Shown here one piece after another: positions 24,710 to 46,944 of a DNA stretch of 64,000 nt. Every line of letters begins with the position of its first letter. Position 1 is the first letter of the stretch. The position numbers were made by a program, and so were the translations under genes. The stretch spans positions 186,001-250,000 of IMG/VR virus record IMGVR_UViG_3300047445_000186; one strand, written 5' to 3'. The notes below the pieces were generated by a model, which worked only from the letters and a program-made list of their open reading frames with translations, was not told the DNA's origin and searched no databases.

Positions 24710-25762
24710 ATGGAACATATGCAATTGGGGCATCTGAACAACGATTTTCGGACGTGCCTGCATCATCTGAATGCGCACGGCATGACTGCGCACCCACGTG
24801 GAACGACCACGAAAGAGCTGCTGAATTACAACATTTCGCTCGGCGATCCACGCAATCGGATCATCAATTTCCCTGATCGGAAGACCAATCTGAAGTACCT
24901 GCTCGGTGAATTCTGCTGGTATCTCGCTGGTGACAACGACCCTGACAGCATCATCCCGTACAGCAAGTTCTGGGACAACATCCGCAATTCTGGCGACATG
25001 CCGGGATACGCGAAGGGCACGATCAATTCGAACTACGGCTATCGTCTGTTCGGTCTGGACAACGAGATGCTCGTTCCGCATGTCGAGAAGGCAATGACTC
25101 CGTACGGTTGCGATGAGACCGGTGCAGTCGTGATCGAGCCGCATGAGACGACAGTGATTCGTGGTCAGAGCCAGTGGGCAGCAGTAGTCGACATGCTCAA
25201 GGCCGACAAGGATTCGCGTCAAGCGATCATGAACATCCATCGCCCAAGTGATCGTCACGTCGGGAACAAGGACGTTGCATGTACCCTGACCCTGCAGTTC
25301 TTCATTCGTGAGAACAAGTTGTTCATGATCACGAACATGCGATCGAACGACATCATTCTCGGCTTCACGAACGACGTGTTCCAGTTCACGATGCTGCAAG
25401 AAGGCCTGATGGTTCAACTGCGTGAAACGTACCCTGAGCTTGAGCTCGGCGCGTACTACCACAATGCAGGTTCGATGCACATCTACGACAGGCACTTCGA
25501 GATGGCGAACAAGATCGTCGCTGACGAACGAGCACTCGAGCTGTCAATGGTTCCAATGGATCGATTCGACTCCGAGATTCTGGACAGCCTGGTCGAGATT
25601 GAAACTGAGTGGCGCAAGGACGGCATGAAGAAGGACTTCAACTTCAATCTGTACACCTCGTACCAGAAGCTCACACCGTACTGGCAGAACCTGATTCAAA
25701 TGTGCTTCGCCGAAGATGGTGAAGCAATGCACGCCGTGTTCGGCATCCCAGAGGAGCATTGA
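24710..25762 (+). CDS. T4 gp42-like dCMP hydroxymethylase/hydroxylase (thymidylate synthase fold)
   Basis: INSNYG, DSRQAIMNIHRPS, catalytic ACT, MRSNDIILGFTND (Asp at the dCMP-specifying position, like gp42 D179) and NAGSMHIYDRHF. Confidence 0.85.
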   Translation: MEHMQLGHLNNDFRTCLHHLNAHGMTAHPRGTTTKELLNYNISLGDPRNRIINFPDRKTNLKYLLGEFCWYLAGDNDPDSIIPYSKFWDNIRNSGDMPGYAKGTINSNYGYRLFGLDNEMLVPHVEKAMTPYGCDETGAVVIEPHETTVIRGQSQWAAVVDMLKADKDSRQAIMNIHRPSDRHVGNKDVACTLTLQFFIRENKLFMITNMRSNDIILGFTNDVFQFTMLQEGLMVQLRETYPELELGAYYHNAGSMHIYDRHFEMANKIVADERALELSMVPMDRFDSEILDSLVEIETEWRKDGMKKDFNFNLYTSYQKLTPYWQNLIQMCFAEDGEAMHAVFGIPEEH

Positions 25763-25763
25763 A

Positions 25764-25940
25764 ATGGAAATGGCATTTGCGCTGTTGCTAGTTCTGATCG
25801 GAGGCTTCGGCCTTCTGGTCGGCTTGAACTTCAGCCACAAGGAAGGTGACGGCGACATGTCGACGTTGTACGCCATAATTGGCGGTGCTTGGGCTGCTGG
25901 CCTTTGCACGTTCGCAGCGAAAGTGATGCACCTCACATGA
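25764..25940 (+). CDS. Small two-TM membrane protein
   Basis: 58 aa with two hydrophobic spans; ATGA-coupled to the next ORF. Confidence 0.65.
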   Translation: MEMAFALLLVLIGGFGLLVGLNFSHKEGDGDMSTLYAIIGGAWAAGLCTFAAKVMHLT

Positions 25941-26146
25941 GCGATAACCTGGTTGGATATAGAGGCGCGACCACTATGGACACCGGGTATTTCTACTGTC
26001 CTTATCCGTTCGGGTCTACTGAAGAGCAGATCCGAGCGATAAACGCGAGCCTTGAAGCATCGCGTCTGACGGAAGAACAACGTGCGTTCCAGCAGAAGCT
26101 CGCAAAGAGCATCAAAGACACACCGAAGGTTCCATGGAAAAGCTGA
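25937..26146 (+). CDS. Small protein with a gp23 major-capsid-like N-terminal motif
   Basis: LVGYRGATTMDTGYFYCPY versus T4 gp23 VGYKGPNEMDAGIYYAPY (recalled). Confidence 0.6.
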   Translation: MSDNLVGYRGATTMDTGYFYCPYPFGSTEEQIRAINASLEASRLTEEQRAFQQKLAKSIKDTPKVPWKS

Positions 26147-26601
26147 CAATCATTGCGTACTACAGGCCTGAAAGCGATAAGAACGCGTTCGCCATCCGCG
26201 GCGAAGTCTCTGAACGGTACGAGTCGCTATACAAGTGGCTGAGTGGCGGGAAGTGCTCGGCTCGGTCCGTGTACAGCGACATGCCGTGGGACGTGATCGT
26301 TTTCGATGATCCATTCGATGAGCAATCGTTCCTCGTGTTCTATGAAGGTGACATCGAATTCAGCACCATGCAGGGAGACGAGCCGTACCGTCCGCTGCCG
26401 AAGATCAAGTACAAGCAAGGTGTCGTGCCGGCCGAAGAGCGAGTGATCGGTCAGTCGTACCTTGGGAACTGCGGGCACTATCACGTTCATCAGGACCCGA
26501 ACCGGGATTTCATGGGCGAACTTGCAGACACTTTGGCCGCCGAGATCTCTCGGGAGATTGACAACGAGATCCTAGAACAGCTCCGCAAAGAATTCACTTA
26601 A
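26134..26601 (+). CDS. Hypothetical protein with a gp23 major-capsid-like C-terminal helix
   Basis: ELADTLAAEISREIDNEIL versus T4 gp23 ELSGILATEIMLEINREVV (recalled). Confidence 0.6.
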   Translation: MEKLTIIAYYRPESDKNAFAIRGEVSERYESLYKWLSGGKCSARSVYSDMPWDVIVFDDPFDEQSFLVFYEGDIEFSTMQGDEPYRPLPKIKYKQGVVPAEERVIGQSYLGNCGHYHVHQDPNRDFMGELADTLAAEISREIDNEILEQLRKEFT

Positions 26602-26617
26602 AGTCTAGAATACCTCA

Positions 26618-28363
26618 ATGAGATACGAAAAACAAATTCTCGAGGCGTACGATCGCCTTGAGTTCAAACCACGTGGTCGTCAGGTCGAAGACATCGACAC
26701 GATCATGACCTCGTTCCTCGATGAGGGATTCAAGACCGTGATTCTGTCGGCTCCGACTGGCACGGGTAAGTCGATCATTGGTGCCGTTACTGCTGAAGCT
26801 CTGCACCGCATTCGCTGGCCGGATCTGAACGCGAACGCGAGCTTCTTGCTCACGCCAACGAACATTCTGTCTCAGCAGTACCACGACACCTTCCAAGAAG
26901 GACGTGATCCGAATGACACGCGTTTCCGGATGATCAAGGGCGCTGGGAACTTCCCATGCGAGGCTCTTAGCACGGAGTCTGAACCGCAGACCGCCGAGTC
27001 GTGCGCGCTCCGTCTGTTCCAGAAAGAGCAGATGACTTCGATGATCGACACGTTCTGCAATGGATGTGACTTCGCCCATCAGAAGAAGATGCGTGACAAG
27101 TCGCGCCATCTGATCACGAACTACGCGTACTACTTCATCGATCGGATGTACATGGAGATGCTCGCGAAGCGAACCGTGTGCGTGTTCGACGAAGCGCATT
27201 TGCTGAACGATCTGTTCACCGAGCACAACGCGATCTACTTCAGCGATTCGCGTCTGAAGAAGATGGCCGAGGAAATCAACGAAGGCCTATCGCTCGGGCA
27301 CACTGAAGTGTTCAAGATCCTGAAGACGGTGAAGACGGATCTGAATGCCGGGAAGATCAACGATCAGACGTACATGAACTATCTGCACCAGCTTGCAGAC
27401 GCGTACGGGCAAGTCACTGAAGCGGCTCAAGAAGCGGCTGAACGTGAAGTGCGGAATCCGAAGAAGTACCTGCAACTCTCGCGCCTGTCGAAGAAGTACT
27501 TCGGCCTTGGCTGCAAGATTGGTGACCTTGTTGAGTACGGGTACCCACATGCATTCGAGTACAAGGAACGGAATCCGAAGTTCAATCAGCACGAAGACGA
27601 AATCTCCGTGAAGCCAATCTTCGTTGGCGACATGTTCGACAAGCTGATCAACGCAGATTACAACCTACTGATGTCGGCAACGTTCAGCGAGCAGTTCGCT
27701 CGTCGTACCCTGACCCTCGAGAACGCGAAGCACATCCGTCTGCAACCTTCGTTCCCGAAAGAGAACAAGAAGGTCGTGTTCTACAAGCCGCAGAATCTGA
27801 ACTTCACCTCGCTGAAAGAGTCGAAGACAGTGAAGCAGCTTCAAGCGACCTGCTACGAGATCGCGAAGCACCACACCGACAAGGGTGAACGTGGTATCGT
27901 GCTCGCTCCGAGCTTCGCGCTGAATGAAGGCATTGCCGCTGCGTTCGACGTGATGGGTCTGAAGGCACGAGTGTTCGAGCACAAGCGCGGTGAGAAGCTC
28001 GCTGAAGTTCTGGGTCGATTCAAGCGACACACTGACGGACCTGCAGTGATGCTCACTCCGTCTGGCTTCGAGGGTATGGACTTGGCTGGTGATCTGAGCC
28101 GTTATCAGATCATCTTGAAGGCACCGTTCGGTTCGCTGGGTGAAGCGCGGATGAAGAAGATTCTGGCAACGTGGCCTGACATTTACTCGCTGCTTTGCAC
28201 GATGAAGCTCGTTCAAGGTGCTGGTCGTTCGGTCCGTGGGCCAGATGACTACGCCACGACGTACATGCTCGACACGAACATTCAGCGTCTCTGGACAGCG
28301 AAGAACATGGAATGGGCTGATGAGTTCCAGACGATCTTCACTTCGATGCTGAGCGACGACTAA
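26618..28363 (+). CDS. DinG/Rad3-like SF2 helicase
   Basis: SAPTGTGKS, FDEAHLL, LMSATF, GFEGMDL and QGAGRSVRGPDD. Confidence 0.85.
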   Translation: MRYEKQILEAYDRLEFKPRGRQVEDIDTIMTSFLDEGFKTVILSAPTGTGKSIIGAVTAEALHRIRWPDLNANASFLLTPTNILSQQYHDTFQEGRDPNDTRFRMIKGAGNFPCEALSTESEPQTAESCALRLFQKEQMTSMIDTFCNGCDFAHQKKMRDKSRHLITNYAYYFIDRMYMEMLAKRTVCVFDEAHLLNDLFTEHNAIYFSDSRLKKMAEEINEGLSLGHTEVFKILKTVKTDLNAGKINDQTYMNYLHQLADAYGQVTEAAQEAAEREVRNPKKYLQLSRLSKKYFGLGCKIGDLVEYGYPHAFEYKERNPKFNQHEDEISVKPIFVGDMFDKLINADYNLLMSATFSEQFARRTLTLENAKHIRLQPSFPKENKKVVFYKPQNLNFTSLKESKTVKQLQATCYEIAKHHTDKGERGIVLAPSFALNEGIAAAFDVMGLKARVFEHKRGEKLAEVLGRFKRHTDGPAVMLTPSGFEGMDLAGDLSRYQIILKAPFGSLGEARMKKILATWPDIYSLLCTMKLVQGAGRSVRGPDDYATTYMLDTNIQRLWTAKNMEWADEFQTIFTSMLSDD

Positions 28364-28374
28364 CCCGGTACAGG

Positions 28375-28400
28375 GATGGAGGGTGTTCCCCTCCATCTTA
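28375..28400 (+). terminator. Hairpin after the helicase gene
   Basis: GATGGAGGG / CCCTCCATC stem; weak T tail. Confidence 0.45.
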
Positions 28401-28409
28401 GAATGATTC

Positions 28410-29528
28410 ATGGCAAATCAACCTCTCGCAAGAAAAGCAAAGCGCGAGCAGAAGGCAACACGCTCCACCCGCCGCCGACTGTCAGATAATCCCAGACACG
28501 CAGTTTACGAAGACAACTTCATGGATGAACCACAACTAGAAAATTCGCGGAACGCAGGGCCTGATGGCGTTGTGTTCGGTGTGTACGGTCTCGATGACTG
28601 GGTCACGAACACATACCTCCGAAATGCCGTCGAAAAAGGCATGAACACCCTCAGCCTTGAGGGCACATGGATCACCCCGTCGAGCTGGAAGCTCCATGAG
28701 TGGGTCACGGCGAAAGCTGAGCGATTCAACTTCATGTCGGCCAATCGTGCTCTCGCATGGTTCAGCTGGGGCATGATCGAACTGACCCTGACATCGGGTA
28801 AGCTCTGCATCGAGCTGAACGGTACGCCAGAAGAAGTCGTCGCATTCGTTGCATCGGTTGACGGTGAAATGAAGCGCGCCGAGAATCTGATCGAGTGGAT
28901 CTACAACACGAAGGGCGACAGCATCTCGGTTCCGCTGAACTATCGTGCAGCAGTTCCAGGCGCGTACCCTTGGCTCCCAACGGAGATCGGTGAGTACATC
29001 GACGGGTACATGAACTCGAACGCGAGTGTGCTCGTTCTGATCGGCCCTCCAGGCACCGGCAAGACGTCGTTCATCAAGCAGCTCATTCACCGCTCTGGCA
29101 GTGACGCGAAGATCACGTACGACGAGAAGGTCATGAGCGACGACTCGCTGTTCGCAGGGTTCGTGGAAGACGATGCAAAGTTCCTGATCATGGAAGATGC
29201 GGACGCATTCCTGAAGAGCCGAGCCGATGGGAACACGATGATGCATCGCTTCCTGAACGTGTCGGATGGTTTGATCTCGGCCCGCGACAAGAAGCTCGTG
29301 TTCAGCACGAATCTCCCGTCGATCCGTGACATCGATGACGCGCTTCTCCGGGCTGGTCGCTGCTACGACGTGATCGAGTTCCGTGCTCTCACGCGAGCTG
29401 AAGCCGAGCCAGTGGCTGCCGAGCTTGGGCTGGAGCTCCGAGATGGTGCCGAGTTCACACTGGCCGAGCTGTTCAATGAGCAACCTTCCAGTGGTCGTAA
29501 AAATGTTCGAAAGGTCGGATTCGTATGA
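28410..29528 (+). CDS. AAA-family ATPase
   Basis: Walker A GPPGTGKT, Walker B IMEDAD, FSTN sensor and LLRAGRC arginine finger. Confidence 0.85.
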   Translation: MANQPLARKAKREQKATRSTRRRLSDNPRHAVYEDNFMDEPQLENSRNAGPDGVVFGVYGLDDWVTNTYLRNAVEKGMNTLSLEGTWITPSSWKLHEWVTAKAERFNFMSANRALAWFSWGMIELTLTSGKLCIELNGTPEEVVAFVASVDGEMKRAENLIEWIYNTKGDSISVPLNYRAAVPGAYPWLPTEIGEYIDGYMNSNASVLVLIGPPGTGKTSFIKQLIHRSGSDAKITYDEKVMSDDSLFAGFVEDDAKFLIMEDADAFLKSRADGNTMMHRFLNVSDGLISARDKKLVFSTNLPSIRDIDDALLRAGRCYDVIEFRALTRAEAEPVAAELGLELRDGAEFTLAELFNEQPSSGRKNVRKVGFV

Positions 29529-29716: not shown

Positions 29717-30006
29717 CAACGATCTCGTCCCGCAAGGGGACGACTTCAAATAGCCTGACGTTCGATGACCTAACCGACGCAGAGCTCGAGCTGATCTCGG
29801 CCTTGGTCTACAATGTACGACTCGGCAAGGGAAGTATCTATCGCGAAGCTGCGTACGATCTGATGAACAAGATCGAATCCTTCAAGCAGGACGATGACTA
29901 CATCAGCCGAGCCAGTGCACTCGTGGACCCTGAATGTGATGTGCTTGACAGCCATGGCACGCCAGCGTTCACGATCCGTAATCAAGACTACGAAGTCGTC
30001 GTATGA
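29713..30006 (+). CDS. Hypothetical protein
   Basis: ATGA overlaps on both sides. Confidence 0.65.
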   Translation: MTTISSRKGTTSNSLTFDDLTDAELELISALVYNVRLGKGSIYREAAYDLMNKIESFKQDDDYISRASALVDPECDVLDSHGTPAFTIRNQDYEVVV

Positions 30007-30590
30007 GCATAAACAAATTTCTGATCGAGGGTCTCGATCGTCTCGGCAAAGACACCCTGATCGATGGGATCATGCACCAGCGCGGGTACCATCAGGTCCT
30101 GCACTTCTCGAAGCCACGTCATCTCGCTCGGTACATGCCAAGCCCAACGGGCATGACTGCAGCCGAGATGGAGAGTGTCTCGTTCAAGGAGTACCAAGAG
30201 CAATCGTTCAGGACAATGTTCGCGATGCTCCGCAATCTGCCGTACACTCAGATCATTTGCAATCGGGCGCACCTTGGCGAATGCGTGTACGCTCCCCTGT
30301 ACCGCGGGTACGCAGGCGAGTACGTGTTCGACATCGAGAAGCAGTTCTTGAAGGGCGATTCGCGAACCATTCGTCTGATCCTGCTCACTGAAGACTTCAG
30401 CGTGTCGAAGCACTTCGTCGATGACGGTGAGTCATTCGACATCGCAAAGCGCGAGCAAGAGCAGGACCTGTTCAAGGCTGCGTTCGAGAAGTCGTGCATC
30501 AGTGACAAGCGAATCGTGAACGTCACCGATCGCGAAACTGGCGGCTATCGCTCGAAGCAAGACATTCTGCTTGAGGTCACCTCACTATGA
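30003..30590 (+). CDS. dNMP (thymidylate-kinase-like) kinase
   Basis: P-loop IEGLDRLGKDT, ICNRAHLGECVYAPLYRG. Confidence 0.75.
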   Translation: MSINKFLIEGLDRLGKDTLIDGIMHQRGYHQVLHFSKPRHLARYMPSPTGMTAAEMESVSFKEYQEQSFRTMFAMLRNLPYTQIICNRAHLGECVYAPLYRGYAGEYVFDIEKQFLKGDSRTIRLILLTEDFSVSKHFVDDGESFDIAKREQEQDLFKAAFEKSCISDKRIVNVTDRETGGYRSKQDILLEVTSL

Positions 30591-31394: not shown

Positions 31395-31835
31395 ATGACA
31401 CTAATATTTGAAATCAAAGCGGCCCAATTGGCCGCTCGTAAAGAACGTCGGGCAGCGGATGTTGCTGTGCTGACGACCCTGATCGGTGAGGCGGAAATCA
31501 TCGGCAAGAACGATGGAAATCGCGCAGTCACGGACCAGGAAGTGCAGGCCGTAATTAAGAAGTTCATCAAGAATATCGATGAGGTTCTGAAGGTCGTAAA
31601 TCCTGGGTCTGATCAATTCACGACCGCTCAGGAAGAGAAGATTCTTCTGAGCACGTTCCTGCCTGTGCAGCTCTCTGAAGCTGACCTGCGGCTGATCATT
31701 CAAACCGTGATCGATGCACATCAGCTCGTGGCTCCAAAGGGTCTCGGTGTTCTGATGAAGGAACTGAAGGACTCGCATAACGGCACGTACGATGGTGCGC
31801 TTGCCTCGAAACTTGCAAAGGAATTGTTGAAGTGA
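31395..31835 (+). CDS. GatB/YqeY-domain protein
   Basis: EEKILLSTFLPVQLSEADL, GVLMKELK and YDGALAS match the YqeY pattern. Confidence 0.8.
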   Translation: MTLIFEIKAAQLAARKERRAADVAVLTTLIGEAEIIGKNDGNRAVTDQEVQAVIKKFIKNIDEVLKVVNPGSDQFTTAQEEKILLSTFLPVQLSEADLRLIIQTVIDAHQLVAPKGLGVLMKELKDSHNGTYDGALASKLAKELLK

Positions 31836-33001
31836 AAGTTGGTGTAGTTAAACTTGGTGCTCGCATTACCTGGGAAACCGACGCAGCTGTCGGTCCTGGT
31901 GAAGCGATCTCGATCTGCAAGGCACTCACGCGAGGTGGGGCTGAGGTCCATGTGTTCACGAAGATTCTGGCGAAGGACACGCTCGATCCGTCGATTCAGT
32001 GGCACAATACGGTTGGCAGCGATGCACGTTCAATCCATGCAGGTCAAGACCTCGACACGACCGGTCTCGATGCTCTGCTCGTGATTAACGGGAATGTGAA
32101 CTTCTTCGGTGGCGCCGAAGATCGTGCTCAGATTCTGAATTACACGATCATCAATCGGTTCGCGGGTCCGGTGATCTACGTGATGTGCGACCCTGAACTG
32201 CCGATGCTGCAGATCTGGGAGAACGTCTCGAAGAAGCAAGTCGATCCGAAGTACAACTGGGAGAACGTGTACGCTGAGTCGGACATTCGTGTCACGAAGC
32301 CGATCAATGTGCTCTGCCAGCCGTTCAATGTTCAGGCAATGCAGGAAACGTGGAAGAGCAAGAAGGGCGCTGTGCCACTCGGCACGATGTTCCACTTCCC
32401 GATGGAACGCTTCCCGCTCCTGAACGAGTGGCTAGATTACGCCGAAACTCCGGCAGTCGATCTGCTCTACGGCGGTACGGCTCGTGGTGGGCGCCGCATT
32501 CCGAATCTGTACAAGTGGTACTGCGGTCTGCCTGAAGATCTGAACGTCGAAATCTTCGGCAAGATCGACAATGAAGACTTCGAGAAGCACAACAAGATCG
32601 GGAAGCTTCCAGTGAAACGGTACCCAACGTTCACGGGTATGGTGAAGTACTCTGAAGTGCTACCAAAGATGAACAACGCTCTTGCGCATCTGGTCACTGG
32701 CGATCCGTCGTACGAAACGCTCGATCTGATTCCTCAACGCGTTGCCGAGTGCATCGCCGCTGGGAACATCGTGTTCATCGACGCGAACATCGACAAGAGC
32801 CGTCGGATCTATCCTGTTGGAACCGAGGCGCATGACTTCCTGTACGTGCAGACGCAAGATGAACTCGTCGAGCGACTGCGTGTGCTGAAGGAAGAGCCAA
32901 GTCTGCGCTCCACTCTGTGGCAGCAACAGACGATCGCAACGAACTTCAACGCCGACACGTTCACAAAGTCGTTGGTCACGAAGATCGCGGAGTTCGTATG
33001 A
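31832..33001 (+). CDS. bgt: T4 beta-glucosyltransferase-family DNA glycosyltransferase (GT-B)
   Basis: Colinear with T4 BGT: LLVINGNVNFFGG, DLLYGGTARGGRR, VEIFGK, PTFTG, FIDANIDKSRRI. The sugar donor is not established. Confidence 0.85.
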   Translation: MKVGVVKLGARITWETDAAVGPGEAISICKALTRGGAEVHVFTKILAKDTLDPSIQWHNTVGSDARSIHAGQDLDTTGLDALLVINGNVNFFGGAEDRAQILNYTIINRFAGPVIYVMCDPELPMLQIWENVSKKQVDPKYNWENVYAESDIRVTKPINVLCQPFNVQAMQETWKSKKGAVPLGTMFHFPMERFPLLNEWLDYAETPAVDLLYGGTARGGRRIPNLYKWYCGLPEDLNVEIFGKIDNEDFEKHNKIGKLPVKRYPTFTGMVKYSEVLPKMNNALAHLVTGDPSYETLDLIPQRVAECIAAGNIVFIDANIDKSRRIYPVGTEAHDFLYVQTQDELVERLRVLKEEPSLRSTLWQQQTIATNFNADTFTKSLVTKIAEFV

Positions 33002-33198: not shown

Positions 33199-33693
33199 AT
33201 GCCTTCTCTGAACCAATTCAAGAAGCTTGACCCCGAGCTTCGTAAAGACCTGATCGAGCGAGTGATCCTTCGTAAGAAGCGATTCCTCGCTCTGACTGGC
33301 AAGCGTGGTACGTTCGATCCGTCGACGTGCGACGTTCTGCTGGTTGGCGATCGACCGGCCCCATCGGCCCCTGATGACGCGAATTTCCATTACACTCCAT
33401 TCGGTGCCCTCTGGAACTCCTCGTTGTACGTGAACATGGAACTACACAAGGGCGGAATCGATGAAGCTCGGTTGGCCTGGGTGAACTCGGCCGACTTCCA
33501 TGGCGTGCCTCAAGACTATTCGGTTCTCGATCTGCCGTGGAAACACGTGATCGCTCTCGGAGGAGCGGGATCGAAGTGGCTGAAAAAATCGCCGCAGAAA
33601 ATTCCGCACGAAATTTTTCACCACCCCAGTTCTTGGAAACGATTCCACTCCAAGGAACCGTACCCGCTGATTGACTACCTGAAGACGATATGA
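33199..33693 (+). CDS. Uracil-DNA-glycosylase-superfamily fold protein
   Basis: Ordered motifs DVLLVGDRP, PF, WVNS, VIALG and HHPS. Confidence 0.6.
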   Translation: MPSLNQFKKLDPELRKDLIERVILRKKRFLALTGKRGTFDPSTCDVLLVGDRPAPSAPDDANFHYTPFGALWNSSLYVNMELHKGGIDEARLAWVNSADFHGVPQDYSVLDLPWKHVIALGGAGSKWLKKSPQKIPHEIFHHPSSWKRFHSKEPYPLIDYLKTI

Positions 33694-34042: not shown

Positions 34043-34729
34043 ATGCACTTCAACACCCCTACACTGGTCACTCTGACCGCCCCATCTTGCGCTGGCAAGA
34101 GTTACCTGCTCGAGGCAATGGTTGACAGCCTTGGCATGCAGCGTATTGTGTCCACCACTGATCGCGCTCCACGAGCCGGTGAAATCGAAGGTGTGCACTA
34201 CAACTTCATCACGACGAACGAATCTCTGCAGTACGAAGCTGAAGGAAAGTTCGCCGAGCTTGTGACGTTCAATGGCACTCGGTACGGTGTCACTCACGAG
34301 GAAATGGAGAAGAAGCTCGTTCCTGGTGCACCAGCTCCGATCGTGATTCTCGAGCCGAACGGTGTGAACATCTACCGCCAGTACTGTGGTTCGAAGAACT
34401 GGTCGATCTTCACCGTGTTCGTCTCGACGCCTGAAGCCGTTCGCCTTGAACGCCTCGCTGCTCGTACCACTGCTGATCTGCTGAACATTGCAGTGAATGG
34501 CGGTGATCTGGAGAAGAGCCTTCTTGCACGCGGCAATTTGTTCGACCGGTTCGAGAAGATCGTTCACGCGAACAACAAGCGCCTGAAGGCGATCATCGAA
34601 CAAGAACGTCTCTGGGCTGCCACGAACCTGTGGGATGCGCAGATCACAGGTCAAGACCTGAACGTTGCACTCTCGCACCTGAAGCAATCGATCGCCAGCC
34701 GTAACGCCCGCTCCGCAATCTACGCCTAA
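34043..34729 (+). CDS. gmk: Guanylate-kinase-family NMP kinase
   Basis: APSCAGKS P-loop, STTDRAPRAGEIEGVHYNF and TFNGTRYG. Confidence 0.85.
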   Translation: MHFNTPTLVTLTAPSCAGKSYLLEAMVDSLGMQRIVSTTDRAPRAGEIEGVHYNFITTNESLQYEAEGKFAELVTFNGTRYGVTHEEMEKKLVPGAPAPIVILEPNGVNIYRQYCGSKNWSIFTVFVSTPEAVRLERLAARTTADLLNIAVNGGDLEKSLLARGNLFDRFEKIVHANNKRLKAIIEQERLWAATNLWDAQITGQDLNVALSHLKQSIASRNARSAIYA

Positions 34730-34731: not shown

Positions 34732-35061
34732 ATGAAAACCCTCGCCGTAGTACTGTTCATGCTCGGTTCGCACGCTTATGCAGGTGCATTCCTCACTGGG
34801 AAAGACCTGCTTCGCCAATCAACTGAATTCACGACTGGCTTTGTGGCCGGTGCGGTGGACAGCTTGAGTGGTGCTGGTCTCGTGTGCGTCCCGCCGCAGA
34901 CCAAGCTCGGTGAGGTTCATGAGCTGGTAATCGCATGGGTGAAGAACAAGCCAGAACGTCGTGATGGAGCAGCAGTTGAGCTGTTGTTCGAGGTTCTGAC
35001 GAATCGCTACCCATGCGTAAAGCAAGCCCCGACTCTGTCAGCACGTCGGGCAGACGTTTAA
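34732..35061 (+). CDS. Secreted Rap1a-like (T6SS amidase immunity) protein
   Basis: Signal peptide, then TGKDLL, GFVAGAVD, CVP, KNKPE and RYPC. Confidence 0.7.
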   Translation: MKTLAVVLFMLGSHAYAGAFLTGKDLLRQSTEFTTGFVAGAVDSLSGAGLVCVPPQTKLGEVHELVIAWVKNKPERRDGAAVELLFEVLTNRYPCVKQAPTLSARRADV

Positions 35062-35101: not shown

Positions 35102-35383
35102 ATGACAAAAGCAATCAACAAAGCACTGCAAACCCCTGAAGCCCAAGCTCTCCTGGCCGCTGGCCTGAAGCTGAAGTCGACCAAGCGTCAACTCGCGAAC
35201 GGCACGATCGCCCTGACCGGCCGCGTGAAGAAGCGCGCTGTGTCGTACAAGATCACGGCCACTGGTTCGGTCTTGAGCAATGAGTTCGTCGCTCGTCGCG
35301 TTCTCGAATCCACCGAAGGTCAACTGTACCGCGCTGGTCTCCGCGCTGCTGCTGAACTGCTCGCCAAGCGCAAGGCTGCCTGA
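35102..35383 (+). CDS. Hypothetical basic protein
   Basis: RBS AAGGAA; strong codon bias. Confidence 0.75.
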   Translation: MTKAINKALQTPEAQALLAAGLKLKSTKRQLANGTIALTGRVKKRAVSYKITATGSVLSNEFVARRVLESTEGQLYRAGLRAAAELLAKRKAA

Positions 35384-35904
35384 TGCAGTTGTACACCGCT
35401 CCCGAGCCCGTACCGTTCGGCCTTGATCCAGTTCCGTCTGTGTTCTTGGCTGGTTCGATCGAGCAGGGTACCGCAATTGACTGGCAGCACGAAGTGCTGG
35501 ACGAGATCAGCGATCTGCGGGTAGTGGTGTTCAACCCACGACGCAAGGCATGGGACGCGTCGTGGGTGCAATCAATCGACAACCCTCAGTTCAACAAGCA
35601 AGTGAACTGGGAGCTCGACAATCTGTCTCGTTCAGACATCGCGTTCTTCTACTTCGATCCAAAGACGAAGTCGCCAATCACGCTCATGGAACTTGGTTTC
35701 ATGCTTGGCCAATCCATGCAAGGTGGATGGTACGAGATCATCGTGGTTTGCCCAGACGGCTTTTGGCGTCAAGGGAATGTCGAGATCATGTGTGCTCGAG
35801 CCGTCGTGGCTGATGGCACTCGCGTTTCGTACGTGACCGAGCTTGACGCAGGGATTTCGATTCTACGCGACGACATTGAACGCCAGCTGGAACGCGCGAT
35901 TTAA
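35383..35904 (+). CDS. Nucleoside 2-deoxyribosyltransferase-like protein (NDT/DNPH1/MilB superfamily)
   Basis: SVFLAGSI, FNPRR, QVNWELDNL and SPITLMELG. Confidence 0.8.
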   Translation: MQLYTAPEPVPFGLDPVPSVFLAGSIEQGTAIDWQHEVLDEISDLRVVVFNPRRKAWDASWVQSIDNPQFNKQVNWELDNLSRSDIAFFYFDPKTKSPITLMELGFMLGQSMQGGWYEIIVVCPDGFWRQGNVEIMCARAVVADGTRVSYVTELDAGISILRDDIERQLERAI

Positions 35905-41844: not shown

Positions 41845-42053
41845 ACATGGACGAGTTCTACCAATACCACCTGAGCGAACAAGGTCGGGCAGAGATTGCC
41901 AAGAAAGCCGAGGAACTCAGGAAGAAGCTCGAAGAAAGCCGCGAGAAGCGCGTGCCATTCAAGCTGCACGACATCGGCCAGCGCGGGGTTGCTGAAAGCT
42001 GAACGCTATCTGCCACCTAATGCCTGTATAACTCGCACCTCATGGAGAATTGA

Positions 42054-42275: not shown

Positions 42276-42287
42276 TCCCGAACCCAA

Positions 42288-42806: not shown

Positions 42807-43027
42807 CCTGGCTGAAGCTCTACCGCTGGTGGAAAGGCGGTCGGTGGGTGAAACACGAGAACAAGTGGTACCTCGCTGACGTGAACGGCTACATCCGCGG
42901 CGAGTGTCTGAGCGACGAAGGGCGACCATCGTACTTCTCATGCCACGCCGATTTCAAGGGGAACCAAGCGGTCGAAGACTACCGCGCCCCGTACAAGAAT
43001 TCCCCATTCAACAAGAAAGCAAAATGA
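42803..43027 (+). CDS. Hypothetical Trp-rich protein
   Basis: ATGA overlaps. Confidence 0.55.
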   Translation: MTWLKLYRWWKGGRWVKHENKWYLADVNGYIRGECLSDEGRPSYFSCHADFKGNQAVEDYRAPYKNSPFNKKAK

Positions 43028-43485
43028 GCTACCGCCTTTACACCTTCGTGAACCACATCTACATGAGCGAGAAGCAGTTCGGTATCCAGACCGCGCACCT
43101 CGTCTCGACGATGATGAACAACGTCGCCGAACTCAAGGGCGAAGACATGCGGTCGTACCACAAGGTGCATGCATGGGCCGCTGAGTCACCAACGATCATC
43201 ATGTGTCAGGGTGGGAACGTTGCAATGCTGACTGAGTTGTACGAGAAGTTGAAGCCTCTCGCAGCCGATCTGCAGTTGCCCGTCGCGAAGTTCCACGAAG
43301 ATGAACAGAGCCTTGGTGGTGTAATCACCTGCGTCGGGGTTCTCGTTCCTGAGTACCTGTTCGACGCTGAAGTGGTATGGATCGCTGGTTCTCCAGTGTT
43401 CACGATCACGCAAGACAACCCGCGCCCTGCAACTCTGCTCGAGAACGAGTTCCTGGGGATCGTGAAGATCGCGCGTCTCGCGTAA
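43024..43485 (+). CDS. PTH2-like (peptidyl-tRNA hydrolase 2 fold) protein
   Basis: GIQTAH, a W..ESPTII segment, FHEDEQSLGGVITCVG. Confidence 0.55.
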   Translation: MSYRLYTFVNHIYMSEKQFGIQTAHLVSTMMNNVAELKGEDMRSYHKVHAWAAESPTIIMCQGGNVAMLTELYEKLKPLAADLQLPVAKFHEDEQSLGGVITCVGVLVPEYLFDAEVVWIAGSPVFTITQDNPRPATLLENEFLGIVKIARLA

Positions 43486-43495
43486 GGAGTCTCCC

Positions 43496-43981
43496 ATGAC
43501 TGATGACAACATTGACAAGTTCTTCAACGATGCAGGGTTCGCCGCTTGGCACGCCAAGATCGCGCTCACGATCGCTAAAAGTGGTCATCAGCTCATGGGC
43601 GTGTTCGATCATGAAGGCACCATGGCAAGCTTCACGTATACGATTGGTCTTGAGAAACAACTCGGATTCGAGCTGATCGTGTTCGGCCTCCCGTACAAAT
43701 ATGCAGGTCTACTTCTGAATTACATCGCGGCTCAAGTGAAAGCTGGCGAAAAGCTGGTCCTCGATGTACCAGATCAGCGGTGGGCGCAGATTCCGCTGCT
43801 GTTCAAGAAGGCCGATGAAAGAGCGCGAGGATACGTGTGCCAAGCTGATCGGTACTACGGGCACGATGTGCAGACCGTCCAGATCGTGCTACCCGATAAG
43901 AATGCTCGTTTTCCTGGAGACGCGGAGTACGATATTGAGTACATGGAACCCCGCCAATCTCTGCTCTATGACCCAACATAA
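43496..43981 (+). CDS. DUF4262-like protein
   Basis: FTYTIGL, ELIVFGLP and VQIVLPD...FP. Confidence 0.65.
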   Translation: MTDDNIDKFFNDAGFAAWHAKIALTIAKSGHQLMGVFDHEGTMASFTYTIGLEKQLGFELIVFGLPYKYAGLLLNYIAAQVKAGEKLVLDVPDQRWAQIPLLFKKADERARGYVCQADRYYGHDVQTVQIVLPDKNARFPGDAEYDIEYMEPRQSLLYDPT

Positions 43982-44360
43982 AATCGTTCACGTCCTCGTT
44001 CCAGTCCATGATCAGGGCCGCAAGGGCCCTGTCGGGGTTTTGATTCTGCATCATGTCGAAACAGAGATGTGGTTCATGCCTGCCGATTACCTTGGCGACG
44101 AGACGGCGAAGGAAGCGGCCTCGAGAATTCTACGGGACCGAACGTTCATCGACATTCCGTCTTCGCAGTTCCGGTTCGTTGCGCATCGTGGAGGCATGAC
44201 TGAAGTGTTCATGCTCTCTCAGACACCCCTGACGGTGGCCGAGGTGGACCGAGTGACACCGACCGGCGAGTATGATATGGCTACACTAGGCTCGCCAGTC
44301 GATGTCCTCGGCTCACGTGTCGAGACTGACATTCTCAGGGATCTTTCGTACTGGTCCTGA
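43968..44360 (+). CDS. Degenerate Nudix-fold protein
   Basis: WFMPADYLGDETAKEAASRILRDRT resembles a Nudix box lacking the REUxEE glutamates. Confidence 0.45.
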   Translation: MTQHKIVHVLVPVHDQGRKGPVGVLILHHVETEMWFMPADYLGDETAKEAASRILRDRTFIDIPSSQFRFVAHRGGMTEVFMLSQTPLTVAEVDRVTPTGEYDMATLGSPVDVLGSRVETDILRDLSYWS

Positions 44361-44389
44361 ACCCGACATCCCGGGTGTGAGGTTCAAGT

Positions 44390-44410
44390 TGTAACGATTT
44401 CGGTTACAAT
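44390..44410 (+). promoter_or_regulatory. TGTAAC-N7-GTTACAAT promoter/operator
   Basis: Inverted repeat overlapping TACAAT, upstream of the isomerase gene. Confidence 0.6.
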
Positions 44411-44438
44411 TACATGCATAGCTTACTGGGAGACATGC

Positions 44439-45179
44439 ATGTCAACAAACCTCGCACTTCAGTGCATTGAACGTCAAATCGAAGCGCTTCGTGCGCTTCC
44501 CACCCTCGTCGAAACCTCGGAGGAATACAAGAAGATCGTCACGATCGTCACTGAGGTCGCGTTGAGCGAGCACGGAGCTCGTGTCCTGCTTGCCGGCGTC
44601 GGCAAGAACTCGAACATCGCGTCCAAGGTCAGTCAGACCATGGCCAGCCTCGGCATTCCGTCGATGCCGTTGAATGTCTCGCACCTTGGTCACGGCGACT
44701 ACGGCTTCATTGGGAAGTACGATGTGATCATTCACATCAGCCGTTCTGGCATGACCCGTGAAATGCTGGAAGGGATCGAGCACATCTCGCTCATTCGCCC
44801 ATTCGTGACGCAAATCCTGATTCACTGCAAGGCCGGCAAGGTCAAGAACGAGCATGCCGAGATTGAGCTCTTCCTGCCTGATGTCCTCGAAGGCGATGAG
44901 CATGGTCTTGCACCAACAACCTCGACGACCGCGCTGCTCTGCATTCTGGATTGCATCTCGGTTCAAGCATCGGCGAACATCGAGTTCGAACGTCTGGACT
45001 TCCTGAAGTTCCACCCTGATGGCGCACTCGGCGAAATGCTGAAGGCCGAGAAGGCGAAGAAGGTTCACACTGATATTTCGGCCGCCGTTCCTGTCGAAGG
45101 CGTGCCAATCAATGATCCAGCGATCGCAGCATTGGTCACTCCTGAATCCGCTGAAGCAGCACGAAAGTTGGTTGTATGA
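44439..45179 (+). CDS. kdsD: SIS-domain D-arabinose-5-phosphate isomerase (KdsD/GutQ-like, no CBS pair)
   Basis: GVGKNSNIASK, HGDYGFI, ISRSGMTRE, APTTSTT and FHPDGALG. Confidence 0.85.
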   Translation: MSTNLALQCIERQIEALRALPTLVETSEEYKKIVTIVTEVALSEHGARVLLAGVGKNSNIASKVSQTMASLGIPSMPLNVSHLGHGDYGFIGKYDVIIHISRSGMTREMLEGIEHISLIRPFVTQILIHCKAGKVKNEHAEIELFLPDVLEGDEHGLAPTTSTTALLCILDCISVQASANIEFERLDFLKFHPDGALGEMLKAEKAKKVHTDISAAVPVEGVPINDPAIAALVTPESAEAARKLVV

Positions 45180-45337
45180 ACGTCGTAAACATTGGCCTCA
45201 AGACCTTTGACGACGCGGGCCTGGATTGGGATGCGTTCGTGTCGCTGAAACACGAGAATGGAAACACTGAAGACATCCGCCTCACTGAACTTATTGAACG
45301 GATCGTAGAGCGGAAGATCAAGGAAAAACAAGAATGA
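45176..45337 (+). CDS. Hypothetical protein (53 aa)
   Basis: ATGA overlaps with both kdsD and the NTP transferase gene. Confidence 0.6.
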   Translation: MNVVNIGLKTFDDAGLDWDAFVSLKHENGNTEDIRLTELIERIVERKIKEKQE

Positions 45338-46944
45338 ATATCGTGATTGTTGCGGGTGGGCTTGGTTCCCGCCTCGCTCCACTGACAAACAACGTGCCGA
45401 AGTTCCTCGTGAACATCGGGAAGAACACGGGGTATGTGGAGCAAGTTCGGTACTGGGCGAAGCAAATTGATTTTTCTCCGTTCAGCGAAACAAATGACAC
45501 GCTCACCGTGATCGTTCACAGCGCGTACGAAGCTCTGATCAATGCGTACCACAAGGTGTACTTCCCGAACATTCCGCTGATCGTGCAAACGGTTGACGTG
45601 GCGAACGGCTCTGCACACGCGATCTTGAGTACATGTCGTCATTTGAACGGCAAGCCAGTGGTCTTCCAGTGGTGCGACGTTATGCCTGCCGTTCCGCTTC
45701 CAGATTTCGACAAGGAACAGAACGCGATCTTCACGAACTACGATCACTCAAATCGCTATGGCCTTTCGTATGCGAAGACTCCAGGCGGTGGGTGCATTCC
45801 TACACCTCAGCCGGATGGCAAGGGTGGTGTGTTCGGCATGTACTACATCGCGAACTTCCACACGAGTGTGACGTCCCATGATGGTGAAGACTTCGTTGAC
45901 GTGATCACCCAGTACGGCAAGATCCAAGAAGTGAAGCTTGATGGCATCATCGACTGGGGCGACATGCCTAAGCTGAATCAGACCCGTGATACGGCTGATG
46001 CCGCACGTGAGTTCAACAGCATCTCGGTCCAAGGGAACTTGGTCATGAAGTCCGCGCTGAACAAGCAGGGCGAAACGCTGATCGCTCGTGAGATCAATTG
46101 GTACCGCAAGGTCCACAAGGATGGGTACGGCGTTTCGATCCCTGAGATCTGGCCAGCAGATGACGGCAAGAGCTTCATCATGGACAAGGTCGAAGGCGAG
46201 CCGATCTTCAAGGTCTGGCCTGCACTTGATCCTCAAGGACGTGGAATCGTTCTGCGGAAGATCTTCGAGCAGCTCGATCGCCTCCATGACGATGGTGATC
46301 TGTTCGCCGTAGGGACTGACACTGTTCTGCGTGACGTGAAGATCGAAGCTTGTGACAAGCTCCTTGCTCGCTATCGCGAAATCAAGGACGTGATCAAGGC
46401 GTTCGGCCCTATCACGCACGTGAACGGTCTGTACATCGGCGATCTGAATCCAGAGGTCACGATCCACAAGCTGTACGCACGTCTGCACGAGCACTATGCT
46501 GGCACAGAAGATTACAGCATGATCCACGGTGATCTGCAGATGTCGAACAGCATGATCGATACCAGCAATCTCGAAGTGTCGTTCATCGACCCACGCGGTT
46601 ATTTCGGCAAGAGCGAGCTCATGGGTCTGCCAGATTACGACATCGCGAAGGTTTACTACAGCCTGAGCGGGTACGATCTGTTTAACTACAGCCGCGATTT
46701 CCACATCAAGGAACTCGCTGACGGACATCTGGAGTTCGAGATTCCGAAGCCGAATCTCGATGGATGCGAAGACGTGATGGGTGAGCGATTCTGGCACCAA
46801 CATCGCCTGTGGCTCGCGGTGATCTGGATCGGTCTTGCAGGGTACATCAAGAACGACCCGGTGAAATCACTGTGCGCGCACTACCACGGCCTCGCGATCG
46901 CGGAACAAATCTTCCGCGACACGTTCGATCCGTTCAAGCCATGA
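45334..46944 (+). CDS. Bifunctional sugar nucleotidyltransferase + APH/choline-kinase-family kinase
   Basis: N-terminal VAGGLGSRLAPLT...PKFLV and WCD; C-terminal IHGDLQMSN, FIDPRG and YDIAK. Confidence 0.85.
   Translation: MNIVIVAGGLGSRLAPLTNNVPKFLVNIGKNTGYVEQVRYWAKQIDFSPFSETNDTLTVIVHSAYEALINAYHKVYFPNIPLIVQTVDVANGSAHAILSTCRHLNGKPVVFQWCDVMPAVPLPDFDKEQNAIFTNYDHSNRYGLSYAKTPGGGCIPTPQPDGKGGVFGMYYIANFHTSVTSHDGEDFVDVITQYGKIQEVKLDGIIDWGDMPKLNQTRDTADAAREFNSISVQGNLVMKSALNKQGETLIAREINWYRKVHKDGYGVSIPEIWPADDGKSFIMDKVEGEPIFKVWPALDPQGRGIVLRKIFEQLDRLHDDGDLFAVGTDTVLRDVKIEACDKLLARYREIKDVIKAFGPITHVNGLYIGDLNPEVTIHKLYARLHEHYAGTEDYSMIHGDLQMSNSMIDTSNLEVSFIDPRGYFGKSELMGLPDYDIAKVYYSLSGYDLFNYSRDFHIKELADGHLEFEIPKPNLDGCEDVMGERFWHQHRLWLAVIWIGLAGYIKNDPVKSLCAHYHGLAIAEQIFRDTFDPFKP

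What the first reader, a model, noticed from the sequence alone, without database searches (positions are those of the whole stretch)
24710..46944. Dispersed cytosine hypermodification pathway, probably pentose (arabinose-type) glycosylation, in a jumbo phage
Seen in sequence: a gp42-like dCMP-modifying enzyme (24710), a dNMP kinase (30003), a T4 BGT-family glycosyltransferase (31832), an arabinose-5-phosphate isomerase (44439) and a nucleotidyltransferase-kinase fusion (45334). Established: T4 makes hmdCMP with gp42 and glucosylates it with BGT using host UDP-glucose, so it needs no sugar-pathway genes. The T4-like phage RB69 arabinosylates modified cytosine and carries an A5P isomerase and an NTP transferase. 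Inference: this phage makes its own NDP-pentose donor and transfers it to a 5-modified cytosine. The genes are spread over 22 kb rather than clustered, and the glycosyltransferase is BGT-type. This could be an undescribed pathway variant or an undescribed base, with consequences for restriction and CRISPR evasion.
Basis: partly seen in the sequence, partly recalled or inferred. Interest (0 to 1): 0.9.

Follow-up and report, generated by a model that had tools for sequence, protein, structure and literature searches.

The report
Jumbo-phage arabinosyl-hydroxymethylcytosine DNA modification genes
An uncultured 332-kb phage carries T4-style genes for making and glycosylating hydroxymethylcytosine together with RB69-style genes for making UDP-arabinose, a combination that predicts a DNA base (arabinosyl-5-hydroxymethylcytosine) not yet shown to exist in nature.

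Summary
All five genes are real and correctly named. The window is bases 186,001-250,000 of a 331,776-bp viral contig, so this is a jumbo phage.

New here:
- **Acceptor base.** The thymidylate-synthase homolog matches T4 gp42 at all 12 active-site positions. It keeps Asp169, so it lacks the D169N mark of the RB69/DLP3 5-hydroxy-dCMP synthases. The predicted acceptor is 5-hydroxymethylcytosine, not 5-hydroxycytosine.
- **Glycosyltransferase.** It is a true T4 BGT-family enzyme by Pfam, predicted fold (TM 0.78/0.86) and catalytic residues.
- **Donor genes.** The isomerase and the nucleotidyltransferase-kinase fusion are full-length homologs of the proven phage UDP-arabinofuranose enzymes.
- **Co-occurrence.** The same genes recur in the same order and spacing across a clade of uncultured jumbo phages. 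Six of 6 IMG/VR contigs with this glycosyltransferase clade carry the fusion. None of 30 sister-clade contigs do.
- **Independent link.** Another jumbo lineage has isomerase, fusion, phosphatase and BGT-type transferase in one operon.

Not shown: that this transferase uses UDP-arabinose. No pathway phosphatase or dCTPase was found in the window, and 268 kb of the genome was not read.

Verdict: a new variant of a known kind of system, predicted from sequence only.

The parts
24710..25762 (+). Thymidylate-synthase homolog, predicted dCMP hydroxymethylase (T4 gp42 type)
   Evidence: Pfam PF00303 8e-22. The 12 active-site positions read WYDCTMRSNDGD, identical to T4 gp42. The RB69/DLP3 5-hydroxy-dCMP synthases read AYECTMRSQNVD. 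116 of 120 metagenome relatives share the gp42 signature.
30003..30590 (+). Thymidylate-kinase-like nucleotide monophosphate kinase, predicted to phosphorylate 5hm-dCMP
   Evidence: phrog_761 1.6e-5. P-loop IEGLDRLGKD. The AlphaFold model (pLDDT 92) best matches thymidylate kinases, YorR 3kb2 and 2axp. These are the same PDB hits reported for DLP3 gp78 and RB69 gp45 in PMC13326640. Homologs lie next to the TS and GT genes in RsoM2USA, LR756500.1 and most of the IMG/VR GT loci.
31832..33001 (+). T4 beta-glucosyltransferase-family (GT-B) DNA glycosyltransferase, predicted to glycosylate 5hmC in DNA
   Evidence: PF09198 3.7e-17, phrog_7922 4e-46. Model pLDDT 91.7. Best PDB matches are the six T4 BGT entries, E 8e-23 to 2e-20, TM 0.70-0.87; the next folds score TM about 0.5. 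T4 BGT E22, D100, R191, R195, Y261, R269 and E272 are all conserved.
44439..45179 (+). SIS-domain arabinose-5-phosphate isomerase (ribulose-5-P to arabinose-5-P)
   Evidence: phrog_5670 9e-66. NCBIfam KpsF/GutQ 3e-23, KdsD 2e-22. 48% identity to DLP3 gp83 and 45% to RB69 gp55. It lies just upstream of the fusion gene in all 13 clade relatives examined.
45334..46944 (+). AfhE-like bifunctional enzyme: N-terminal sugar-1-phosphate nucleotidyltransferase plus C-terminal APH-type sugar kinase, predicted to make UDP-arabinofuranose
   Evidence: PF00483 plus PF01636, phrog_4098 1e-115. 35% identity over residues 5-495 of DLP3 gp82. Motifs GGLGSRL, HGDLQMSN and IDPRG are shared with DLP3 gp82 and RB69 gp52/53.
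45176..45337 (+). 53-codon ORF between isomerase and fusion gene, function unknown
   Evidence: Called as a gene on all six contigs that carry this locus. Absent in L015 and L016, where the two genes abut. Membership in the pathway is uncertain.
33199..33693 (+). 164-aa protein downstream of the glycosyltransferase, conserved in the clade, function unknown
   Evidence: Homologs at 48-55% identity follow the GT in 4 of 6 clade A IMG/VR loci. No Pfam, PHROG, NCBIfam or PDB sequence hit. Membership is uncertain.
61431..62369 (+). Canonical thymidylate synthase (context only: shows the 24710 gene is a second, specialised paralog)
   Evidence: PF00303 6e-100. Its active-site signature WYLCHQRSVDGN resembles E. 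coli ThyA.

Best explanation
The phage replaces or supplements dC with 5-hydroxymethyl-dC, then decorates it on the DNA with a phage-made pentose.

Proposed steps:
1. The gp42-type enzyme (24710) converts dCMP to 5hm-dCMP.
2. The thymidylate-kinase-like kinase (30003) and host NDP kinase raise it to the triphosphate, which the polymerase incorporates.
3. In parallel, the isomerase (44439) turns ribulose-5-phosphate from the pentose-phosphate pathway into arabinose-5-phosphate.
4. The AfhE-like fusion (45334) phosphorylates C1. After loss of the 5-phosphate, it couples arabinofuranose-1-phosphate to UTP.
5. The BGT-family transferase (31832) moves the arabinosyl group from UDP-arabinose to the hydroxymethyl oxygen of 5hmC in duplex DNA. 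The product is arabinosyl-5-hydroxymethylcytosine, which should block restriction and Cas nucleases.

What is shown by sequence or structure: family membership, catalytic residues, and co-occurrence of the genes. What is inferred: the choice of donor by the transferase, the identity of the 5-phosphatase, and how completely dC is replaced.
For: - **Acceptor.** The 12 residues within 6 A of C5 are identical to T4 gp42. They differ from the 5-hydroxy-dCMP synthases at W80, D169 and G173 (criterion from PMC13326640).
- **Transferase.** BGT family by Pfam, fold and catalytic residues.
- **Donor genes.** Full-length homology to the DLP3 and RB69 enzymes, with shared motifs. The biochemistry of these enzymes is reported in PMC13326640.
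- **Conserved core.** TS, kinase and GT form a trio that also occurs in RsoM2USA and LR756500.1.
- **Co-occurrence by name.** By IMG/VR contig name, 6 of 6 clade A GT contigs of at least 38 kb also carry the fusion, against 0 of 30 sister-clade contigs. Fisher p = 5e-7, not corrected for phylogeny.
- **Conserved layout.** Gene order and spacing are the same on all of them: TS, then GT 6-7 kb on, then the fusion 9-15 kb further.
- **Independent lineage.** L080/L202 (contigs of 278 and 306 kb) has isomerase, fusion, HAD phosphatase and a BGT-family GT as one operon with 4-bp overlaps.
- **DNA role of the donor module.** In L200 it sits inside a cytosine-modification cluster with a TS homolog and an EndoIV-like nuclease.
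Against: - No experiment exists. The phage is uncultured.
- T4 BGT uses UDP-glucose, and no residue pattern separating pentose users from hexose users could be found.
- The GT-fusion correlation could be plain vertical inheritance within one phage lineage.
- No AfhF-type or KdsC-type phosphatase is in the window or next to the fusion in any of 13 clade relatives. It is adjacent in T4-like phages and in two other jumbo lineages.
- No dCTPase was found in the window or in 6.5 kb beyond it.
- 268 kb of the genome was not read, so another glycosyltransferase may exist.
- Some relatives (L016, L201) carry the isomerase and fusion but lack TS, kinase and GT at the syntenic place.
Confidence: 0.5

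Rival explanations
1. Two-layer modification. The BGT-type enzyme makes beta-glucosyl-5hmC from host UDP-glucose, exactly as in T4. The phage-made UDP-arabinose is used by a second, unseen glycosyltransferase. That enzyme adds arabinose onto the glucose or onto the remaining hmC.
For: - All T4 BGT catalytic and UDP-binding residues are kept.
- Sister-clade phages (RsoM2USA type) have the same TS, kinase and GT core without arabinose genes, so the core can work with a host donor.
- Known arabinosylating phages use several transferases in series (PMC13326640).
- 268 kb of the genome is unread.
Against: - No second glycosyltransferase is in the 64-kb window. tblastn with DLP3 gp76, gp77, gp79 and RB69 gp46/47 found nothing.
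- In L080/L202 the only transferase in the arabinose operon is BGT-type.
Confidence: 0.27
2. The isomerase and the fusion serve something other than DNA, for example glycosylation of virion proteins or interference with host envelope sugar metabolism (arabinose-5-phosphate is the Kdo precursor). The DNA then carries only glucosyl-hmC or plain hmC.
For: - The pair lies 11-13 kb from the transferase rather than beside it.
- Relatives L016 and L201 keep the pair without TS, kinase or GT at the syntenic position.
- Fusion homologs at about 28% identity also occur in giant-virus MAGs.
Against: - Wherever the pair's context is informative, it sits with cytosine-modification genes: T4-like phages, L200, L057 and L080/L202.
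- The pair co-occurs strictly with GT clade A on long contigs.
Confidence: 0.13
3. Same base as RB69 and DLP3: arabinosyl-5-hydroxycytosine, made by a flavin-dependent 5-hydroxy-dCMP synthase.
For: The donor genes are homologous to those of RB69 and DLP3. A jumbo phage with a D169N TS homolog does exist (L200).
Against: - The window's enzyme keeps D169, W80 and G173 and is identical to T4 gp42 at all 12 active-site positions.
- Its transferase family is the one that acts on hmC in T4, not the GT4-like family of RB69 and DLP3.
Confidence: 0.05

Closest known systems
Arabinosyl-5-hydroxycytosine pathway of RB69, DLP3, HY126 and related Straboviridae (PMC13326640; PMC6024577)
   Same: Arabinose-5-phosphate isomerase and the bifunctional nucleotidyltransferase/kinase (AfhE type). 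Identities to DLP3 gp83/gp82 and RB69 gp55 are 45-48% for the isomerase and 35% for the fusion. Also shared: a thymidylate-kinase-like kinase beside a TS homolog, and glycosylation on DNA after replication.
   Different: - The TS homolog is the gp42 (hydroxymethyl) type, not the D169N hydroxylase type.
- The transferase is BGT family, not GT4-like.
- No AfhF phosphatase was found.
- The genes are spread over 22 kb instead of sitting in one cluster of roughly 7-8 kb.
- The genome is 332 kb, not 165-175 kb.
T4 glucosyl-hydroxymethylcytosine system (gp42, gp1, beta-glucosyltransferase)
   Same: The dCMP hydroxymethylase active site is identical at 12 of 12 positions. The transferase has the BGT fold (TM 0.78/0.86) with catalytic residues conserved. 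A separate canonical thymidylate synthase is present.
   Different: - Only 26-27% sequence identity.
- The kinase is thymidylate-kinase-like, not the gp1 family.
- The phage encodes its own NDP-sugar pathway, which T4 lacks.
- No alpha-glucosyltransferase or gp56 dCTPase was seen in the window.
RsoM2USA / LR756500.1-type jumbo phages (sister glycosyltransferase clade; modification uncharacterised)
   Same: The TS homolog, kinase and BGT-type transferase trio is shared (37-42% identity to RsoM2USA gp10, gp6 and gp2). It lies in the same genome region, upstream of the topoisomerase genes.
   Different: These phages have a CofD-like protein plus a MobA-like nucleotidyltransferase next to the transferase. 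No isomerase or fusion genes were detected.
Rhizobium phage RL38J1 (hexosylated 5-hydroxycytosine with a phage-encoded UDP-galactose mutase; PMC13326640)
   Same: A precedent for a phage that tailors its own NDP-sugar donor for cytosine glycosylation, with the genes dispersed along the genome.
   Different: Different acceptor (5-hydroxycytosine), different sugars and different enzymes.

Membership tests
T4 gp42-type dCMP hydroxymethylase (thymidylate synthase superfamily) | Thymidylate synthase fold with the catalytic cysteine (E. coli ThyA C146) | tested here: met
   PF00303 8e-22. The cysteine is invariant in alignment A1.
T4 gp42-type dCMP hydroxymethylase (thymidylate synthase superfamily) | N177 replaced by Asp (cytosine rather than uracil substrate), and L143 replaced by an acidic residue (water access, giving a hydroxymethyl product) | tested here: met
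   Both positions are Asp. The criteria are quoted from PMC13326640.
T4 gp42-type dCMP hydroxymethylase (thymidylate synthase superfamily) | Produces 5hm-dCMP from dCMP and methylene-tetrahydrofolate | not testable with these tools
   Needs the in vivo or in vitro assay.
5-hydroxy-dCMP synthase (RB69 gp48 / DLP3 gp80 type) | D169N substitution (E. coli ThyA numbering) | tested here: not met
   The window protein reads RSNDI with Asp at 169. RB69, DLP3 and PspYZU05 read RSQN or RSEN.
T4 beta-glucosyltransferase family (Pfam PF09198; GT-B fold) | Sequence family and two-domain GT-B fold closest to T4 BGT | tested here: met
   PF09198 at 63 bits against a cut-off of 27. Foldseek top six hits are all T4 BGT, E down to 8e-23, TM 0.78/0.86.
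T4 beta-glucosyltransferase family (Pfam PF09198; GT-B fold) | Catalytic base Asp100 and UDP-binding Arg191, Arg195, Arg269 and Glu272 (residue roles recalled from the T4 BGT structural literature) | tested here: met
   All are invariant in 69 clade A and 51 clade B sequences, except one E272Q in clade B.
T4 beta-glucosyltransferase family (Pfam PF09198; GT-B fold) | Donor is UDP-glucose and acceptor is 5hmC in duplex DNA | not testable with these tools
   Clade-specific residues next to E272 exist, but they do not track the arabinose genes once L080 is added.
Phage UDP-arabinofuranose pathway (isomerase, AfhE, AfhF) | SIS-domain arabinose-5-phosphate isomerase | tested here: met
   phrog_5670 9e-66, KpsF/GutQ 3e-23, 48% identity to DLP3 gp83.
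Phage UDP-arabinofuranose pathway (isomerase, AfhE, AfhF) | Bifunctional nucleotidyltransferase plus kinase (AfhE) | tested here: met
   Both domains are present. 35% identity over the full length of DLP3 gp82, with shared motifs.
Phage UDP-arabinofuranose pathway (isomerase, AfhE, AfhF) | HAD-type phosphatase (AfhF) that removes the 5-phosphate | tested here: inconclusive
   Absent from the 64-kb window by tblastn, by HMM over six frames, and by Pfam/PHROG of the neighbours. Two pattern scans of IMG/VR do not hit this contig. 268 kb of the genome was not read directly.
Phage UDP-arabinofuranose pathway (isomerase, AfhE, AfhF) | GT4-like DNA arabinosyltransferase (DLP3 gp79 / RB69 gp46:47 type) | tested here: not met
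   No tblastn hit in the window at E up to 1 apart from chance-level fragments.
Thymidylate-kinase-like nucleotide kinase of hypermodifying phages (DLP3 gp78 / RB69 gp45 analog) | P-loop NMP kinase fold, encoded beside the TS homolog and the transferase | tested here: met
   The model matches thymidylate kinases, YorR 3kb2 and 4s35. Synteny with TS and GT holds in both clades. Sequence similarity to DLP3 gp78 is only chance-level (E 0.12).

The most novel reading that the evidence does not exclude
Clade A phages have really dispensed with the 5-phosphatase. In that case the fusion enzyme would uridylylate arabinose-1,5-bisphosphate. The BGT-type enzyme would then transfer arabinose-5-phosphate. 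The DNA would carry a negatively charged phospho-pentosyl-hydroxymethylcytosine, a type of base never described.

The less extreme reading is plain arabinosyl-5hmC made by a BGT-family enzyme that has switched donor. That is my best explanation, and it too would be an undescribed natural base.
Probability: 0.05. Interest if true: 0.85.

Novelty: new variant of a known kind. Interest (0 to 1): 0.62.

Why it matters
Arabinosyl-hmC was the structure first proposed for RB69 in 2018. In 2026 it was corrected to arabinosyl-5-hydroxycytosine. A phage clade that pairs a true gp42-type hydroxymethylase with the arabinose donor genes suggests the originally proposed base may exist after all, in uncultured jumbo phages.

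If true, it would show three things:
- DNA-sugar donor modules and acceptor/transferase modules are mixed and matched between very different phage families.
- The BGT family is not restricted to glucose.
- Defence systems that read glucosyl-hmC or arabinosyl-5-hydroxy-C would face a third target.

A BGT-type enzyme that accepts UDP-arabinose would also be a useful reagent for labelling 5hmC. The claim can be tested directly with synthetic genes in E. coli laboratory strains.

Tried and rejected
- **Near-identity DNA search** of the 23.5-kb region against GenBank phages: no match.
- **AfhF phosphatase.** tblastn, an HMM of three AfhF proteins over six-frame translations of the window and four relatives, and an IMG/VR scan found only T4-like contigs.
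- **KdsC-like HAD phosphatase** from L200, L080 and L057: tblastn and an IMG/VR scan did not hit the window's contig.
- **dCTPase/MazG.** Not found among the ORFs near the canonical thymidylate synthase or in the 6.5 kb beyond the window. The RsoM2USA NTP-PPase gave no tblastn hit in the window.
- **Kinase sequence searches.** Pfam, NCBIfam and a PDB profile search of the kinase gave nothing. Only the predicted fold resolved it.
- **Donor-specificity residues in the transferase.** Positions 18, 20, 98, 190, 271, 273, 275 and 276 (T4 numbering) separate clades A and B. The operon-linked L080 enzyme carries a mixture of both states, so I dropped the idea.
- **The 182-aa and 164-aa conserved neighbours.** No family or PDB sequence hit.
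- **Promoter and terminator scan** of 24-34 kb: fewer sites than in shuffles. **tRNA scan:** none.
- **RsoM2USA coverage.** I read only 1-65 kb and 333-344 kb directly. Absence of the arabinose genes elsewhere rests on the published annotation table and on the IMG/VR scan.
- **Rejected: the 5-hydroxycytosine reading**, because D169 is retained.

Full report
**1. What is there**

- The window has about 55% G+C.
- It is bases 186,001-250,000 of a 331,776-bp metagenomic viral contig: JGI 3300047445 Ga0495677_0000003, which is IMGVR_UViG_3300047445_000186.
- Gene layout:
  - Bases 7-24.7 kb carry minus-strand tail-fibre genes.
  - From 24.7 kb a long plus-strand block of replication and nucleotide-metabolism genes begins.
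- There is no near-identical DNA in GenBank phages.
- The nearest cultured relative is the 344-kb Ralstonia phage RsoM2USA, at 37-56% protein identity for shared genes.
- 'Jumbo phage' is therefore correct.

**2. The five genes**

All five ORFs are at the stated coordinates and hit the stated families.

- **Kinase.** This was the weakest call: a single PHROG hit at 1.6e-5, with no Pfam, NCBIfam or PDB sequence match.
  - A pLDDT 92 model built on 14 homologs best matches thymidylate kinases and the SPbeta protein YorR.
  - Those are the same structures reported for the 'nucleotide kinase' next to the TS homolog in DLP3 and RB69 (PMC13326640).
- **Glycosyltransferase.** The model (pLDDT 91.7) matches the six T4 BGT entries at E 8e-23 to 2e-20 and TM up to 0.86. 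Every other GT-B protein scores TM about 0.5.
  - T4 BGT E22, D100, R191, R195, Y261, R269 and E272 are conserved.
- **Fusion protein.** It aligns over its full length with DLP3 gp82 and with the two halves of the RB69 gene. It shares the nucleotide-binding, HGDxxxSN and IDPRG motifs.

**3. Which base**

- RB69 and DLP3 carry arabinose on 5-hydroxycytosine. The precursor is made by a flavin-dependent TS homolog.
- The diagnostic change in that enzyme is D169N in E. coli ThyA numbering (PMC13326640).

I aligned the window protein with E. coli ThyA, T4 gp42, RB69 gp48, DLP3 gp80 and others. I then read the 12 residues that lie within 6 A of C5.

| Protein | 12-residue signature |
|---|---|
| Window 24710, and 116 of its 120 closest metagenome relatives | WYDCTMRSNDGD |
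| T4 gp42 | WYDCTMRSNDGD |
| RB69 gp48 and DLP3 gp80 (5-hydroxy-dCMP synthases) | AYECTMRSQNVD |
| Window 61431-62369 (second TS gene) | WYLCHQRSVDGN |

- The window's second TS gene is an ordinary thymidylate synthase (Pfam 6e-100).
- The predicted product of 24710 is therefore 5hm-dCMP, as in T4, and not 5-hydroxy-dCMP.

**4. Relatives and co-occurrence**

*Metagenome protein searches.* All three proteins have many relatives, and many of those sit on contigs of 270-385 kb:
- the fusion: more than 100 relatives at 43-65% identity;
- the transferase: 70 relatives at 55-77%, then a second tier at or below 48%;
- the TS homolog: 120 relatives listed at 57% or more.

*Transferase tree.*
- It splits into clade A, which holds the window, and clade B, which holds RsoM2USA and LR756500.1.
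- Every fusion-bearing contig falls in clade A.
- Local support for the clade A node is low (0.19). Support for clade B is 0.88.

*Independent IMG/VR scans, matched by contig name*:
- 6 of 6 clade A contigs of at least 38 kb carry the fusion.
- 0 of 30 clade B contigs do, and 13 of those are longer than 100 kb.
- Fisher p = 5e-7.

*Conserved layout.* The order TS, then GT 6-7 kb on, then the fusion 9-15 kb further, recurs on all of them. The dispersed layout is therefore a conserved feature and not an accident of this genome.

*Caveat.* All of this could be vertical inheritance within one lineage. It shows that the genes are retained together. It does not show that they are biochemically coupled.

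**5. Other lineages sharpen the picture**

- **Clade B.** The transferase is followed immediately by a CofD-like protein and a MobA-like nucleotidyltransferase in 27 of 30 loci. It is never followed by them in clade A. The common core is TS, kinase and BGT-type transferase, with alternative accessory modules.
- **L200 (350 kb).** This contig has a tight cluster: isomerase, GT2, fusion, KdsC-like HAD phosphatase, a TS homolog with D169N, an EndoIV-like nuclease and a DLP3 gp79-like transferase. That is the RB69 chemistry in a jumbo phage.
- **L080/L202 (278 and 306 kb).** Isomerase, fusion, HAD phosphatase and a BGT-family transferase form one operon with overlapping stop and start codons. This transferase branches outside clades A and B. 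It is the best independent indication that BGT-family enzymes can be partners of the arabinose donor pathway.
- **T4-like phages.** The fusion gene is followed by AfhF and the hydroxylase-type TS.

**6. Gaps**

- No AfhF-type or KdsC-type phosphatase is in the window or next to the fusion in any of 13 clade A loci.
- No dCTPase was located.
- I could not read the other 268 kb of the genome.
- Relatives L016 and L201 keep the isomerase and fusion but lack TS, kinase and GT at the syntenic position. The donor pair is therefore not tied to this core everywhere.
- No residue pattern in the transferase predicts the donor.

**7. Conclusion**

- Most likely product, at about 0.5: arabinosyl-5-hydroxymethylcytosine, made by a T4-type acceptor branch and an RB69-type donor branch.
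- Main rival, at about 0.27: glucosyl-hmC with arabinose added by an unseen second transferase.
- I found no report of this combination in the searched literature.
- It is a new variant of a known kind of system, predicted from sequence only, and testable with synthetic genes.

Noticed in passing
L001:11992-14983 and L043:10045-10794 (RsoM2USA ORF2, ORF1, ORF486); L005:14475-23467 (LR756500.1); IMG/VR loci L131-L160: In the sister clade of jumbo phages, the BGT-type transferase is followed directly by two genes in 27 of 30 loci. One is a 610-620-aa CofD-like protein (PF01933 about 4e-22, with a weak phosphomannomutase-like C-terminus). The other is a MobA-like nucleotidyltransferase. This resembles the CofC/CofD pair, which activates and transfers a phospho-compound. 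It may mark a different, undescribed hypermodification of glycosyl-hmC.
   Followed up: partly
L200:7135-14770 (JGI 3300056750 Ga0558064_0000047, 350,564 bp); also L057: A jumbo-phage contig carries a compact cluster: isomerase, GT2 transferase, fusion, KdsC-like HAD phosphatase, TS homolog with the D169N (5-hydroxycytosine) signature, T4 EndoIV-like nuclease, and a DLP3 gp79-like transferase. The RB69-type pathway therefore exists outside Straboviridae.
   Followed up: partly
L080:2255-6397 and L202:7064-11191 (contigs of 278,473 and 305,891 bp): Four genes form one operon with 4-bp overlaps: isomerase, fusion, HAD-like protein and a BGT-family transferase (PF09198 3e-12). No TS homolog lies within 10 kb on either side.
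   Followed up: partly
L016:9348-14477 (NCBI GCA_040384225.1 contig, 383,404 bp) and L201:9381-16659: These contigs are syntenic with the window and keep the isomerase and fusion. They lack the TS homolog, kinase and BGT-type transferase at the corresponding places. After YqeY they encode a 472-507-aa protein with no Pfam hit. Its N-terminus resembles RsoM2USA gp11 (32% identity), the neighbour of that phage's TS homolog.
   Followed up: partly
IMG/VR loci L083, L085, L086, L088, L091, L093-L095, L099, L100, L102, L103, L107 and others: Full-length homologs of the nucleotidyltransferase-kinase fusion, at 26-30% identity, occur on giant-virus metagenome-assembled contigs (names beginning GVMAG). 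A few have a SIS-domain gene nearby.
   Followed up: no
window 35383-35904: A nucleoside 2-deoxyribosyltransferase-like protein (PF15891 2e-29) sits in the nucleotide-metabolism block near a guanylate kinase (34043-34729). To my recollection, relatives of this fold hydrolyse modified nucleotide monophosphates. A role in pool control is possible but untested.
   Followed up: no
window 49266-50132: A phage-encoded Fpg/Nei-type DNA glycosylase (PF01149 4e-20 plus H2TH). It is conserved at 49% identity in relative L015, a few kb downstream of the fusion gene.
   Followed up: no
window 59398-63362: A run of RNA and ADP-ribose-related genes flanks the canonical thymidylate synthase: a circularly permuted YpsA SLOG protein, Tpt1/KptA RNA 2'-phosphotransferase (9e-45) and a Macro domain protein. 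An Rnl1-type RNA ligase lies about 5 kb past the window end (L041).
   Followed up: no
window 47225-47773 (minus strand): A 182-aa protein with no family hit is encoded on the opposite strand directly after the fusion gene. It is conserved at 50-64% identity in that position in five relatives (L015, L046, L047, L049 and this phage's own contigs).
   Followed up: partly
window 34732-35061, 50323-50592, 56645-58401: Three oddities for a phage: a Rap1a-like type VI immunity-protein domain (1.6e-14), a ribosomal L7/L12-like small protein (precomputed Pfam on L008), and two adjacent DnaJ-domain genes.
   Followed up: no
window 10655-13339, 16964-19894, 22755-24695 (minus strand): Three large tail-fibre genes. 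Two of them end in the endosialidase-chaperone (Peptidase_S74) type C-terminus, which suggests several receptor-binding fibres.
   Followed up: no
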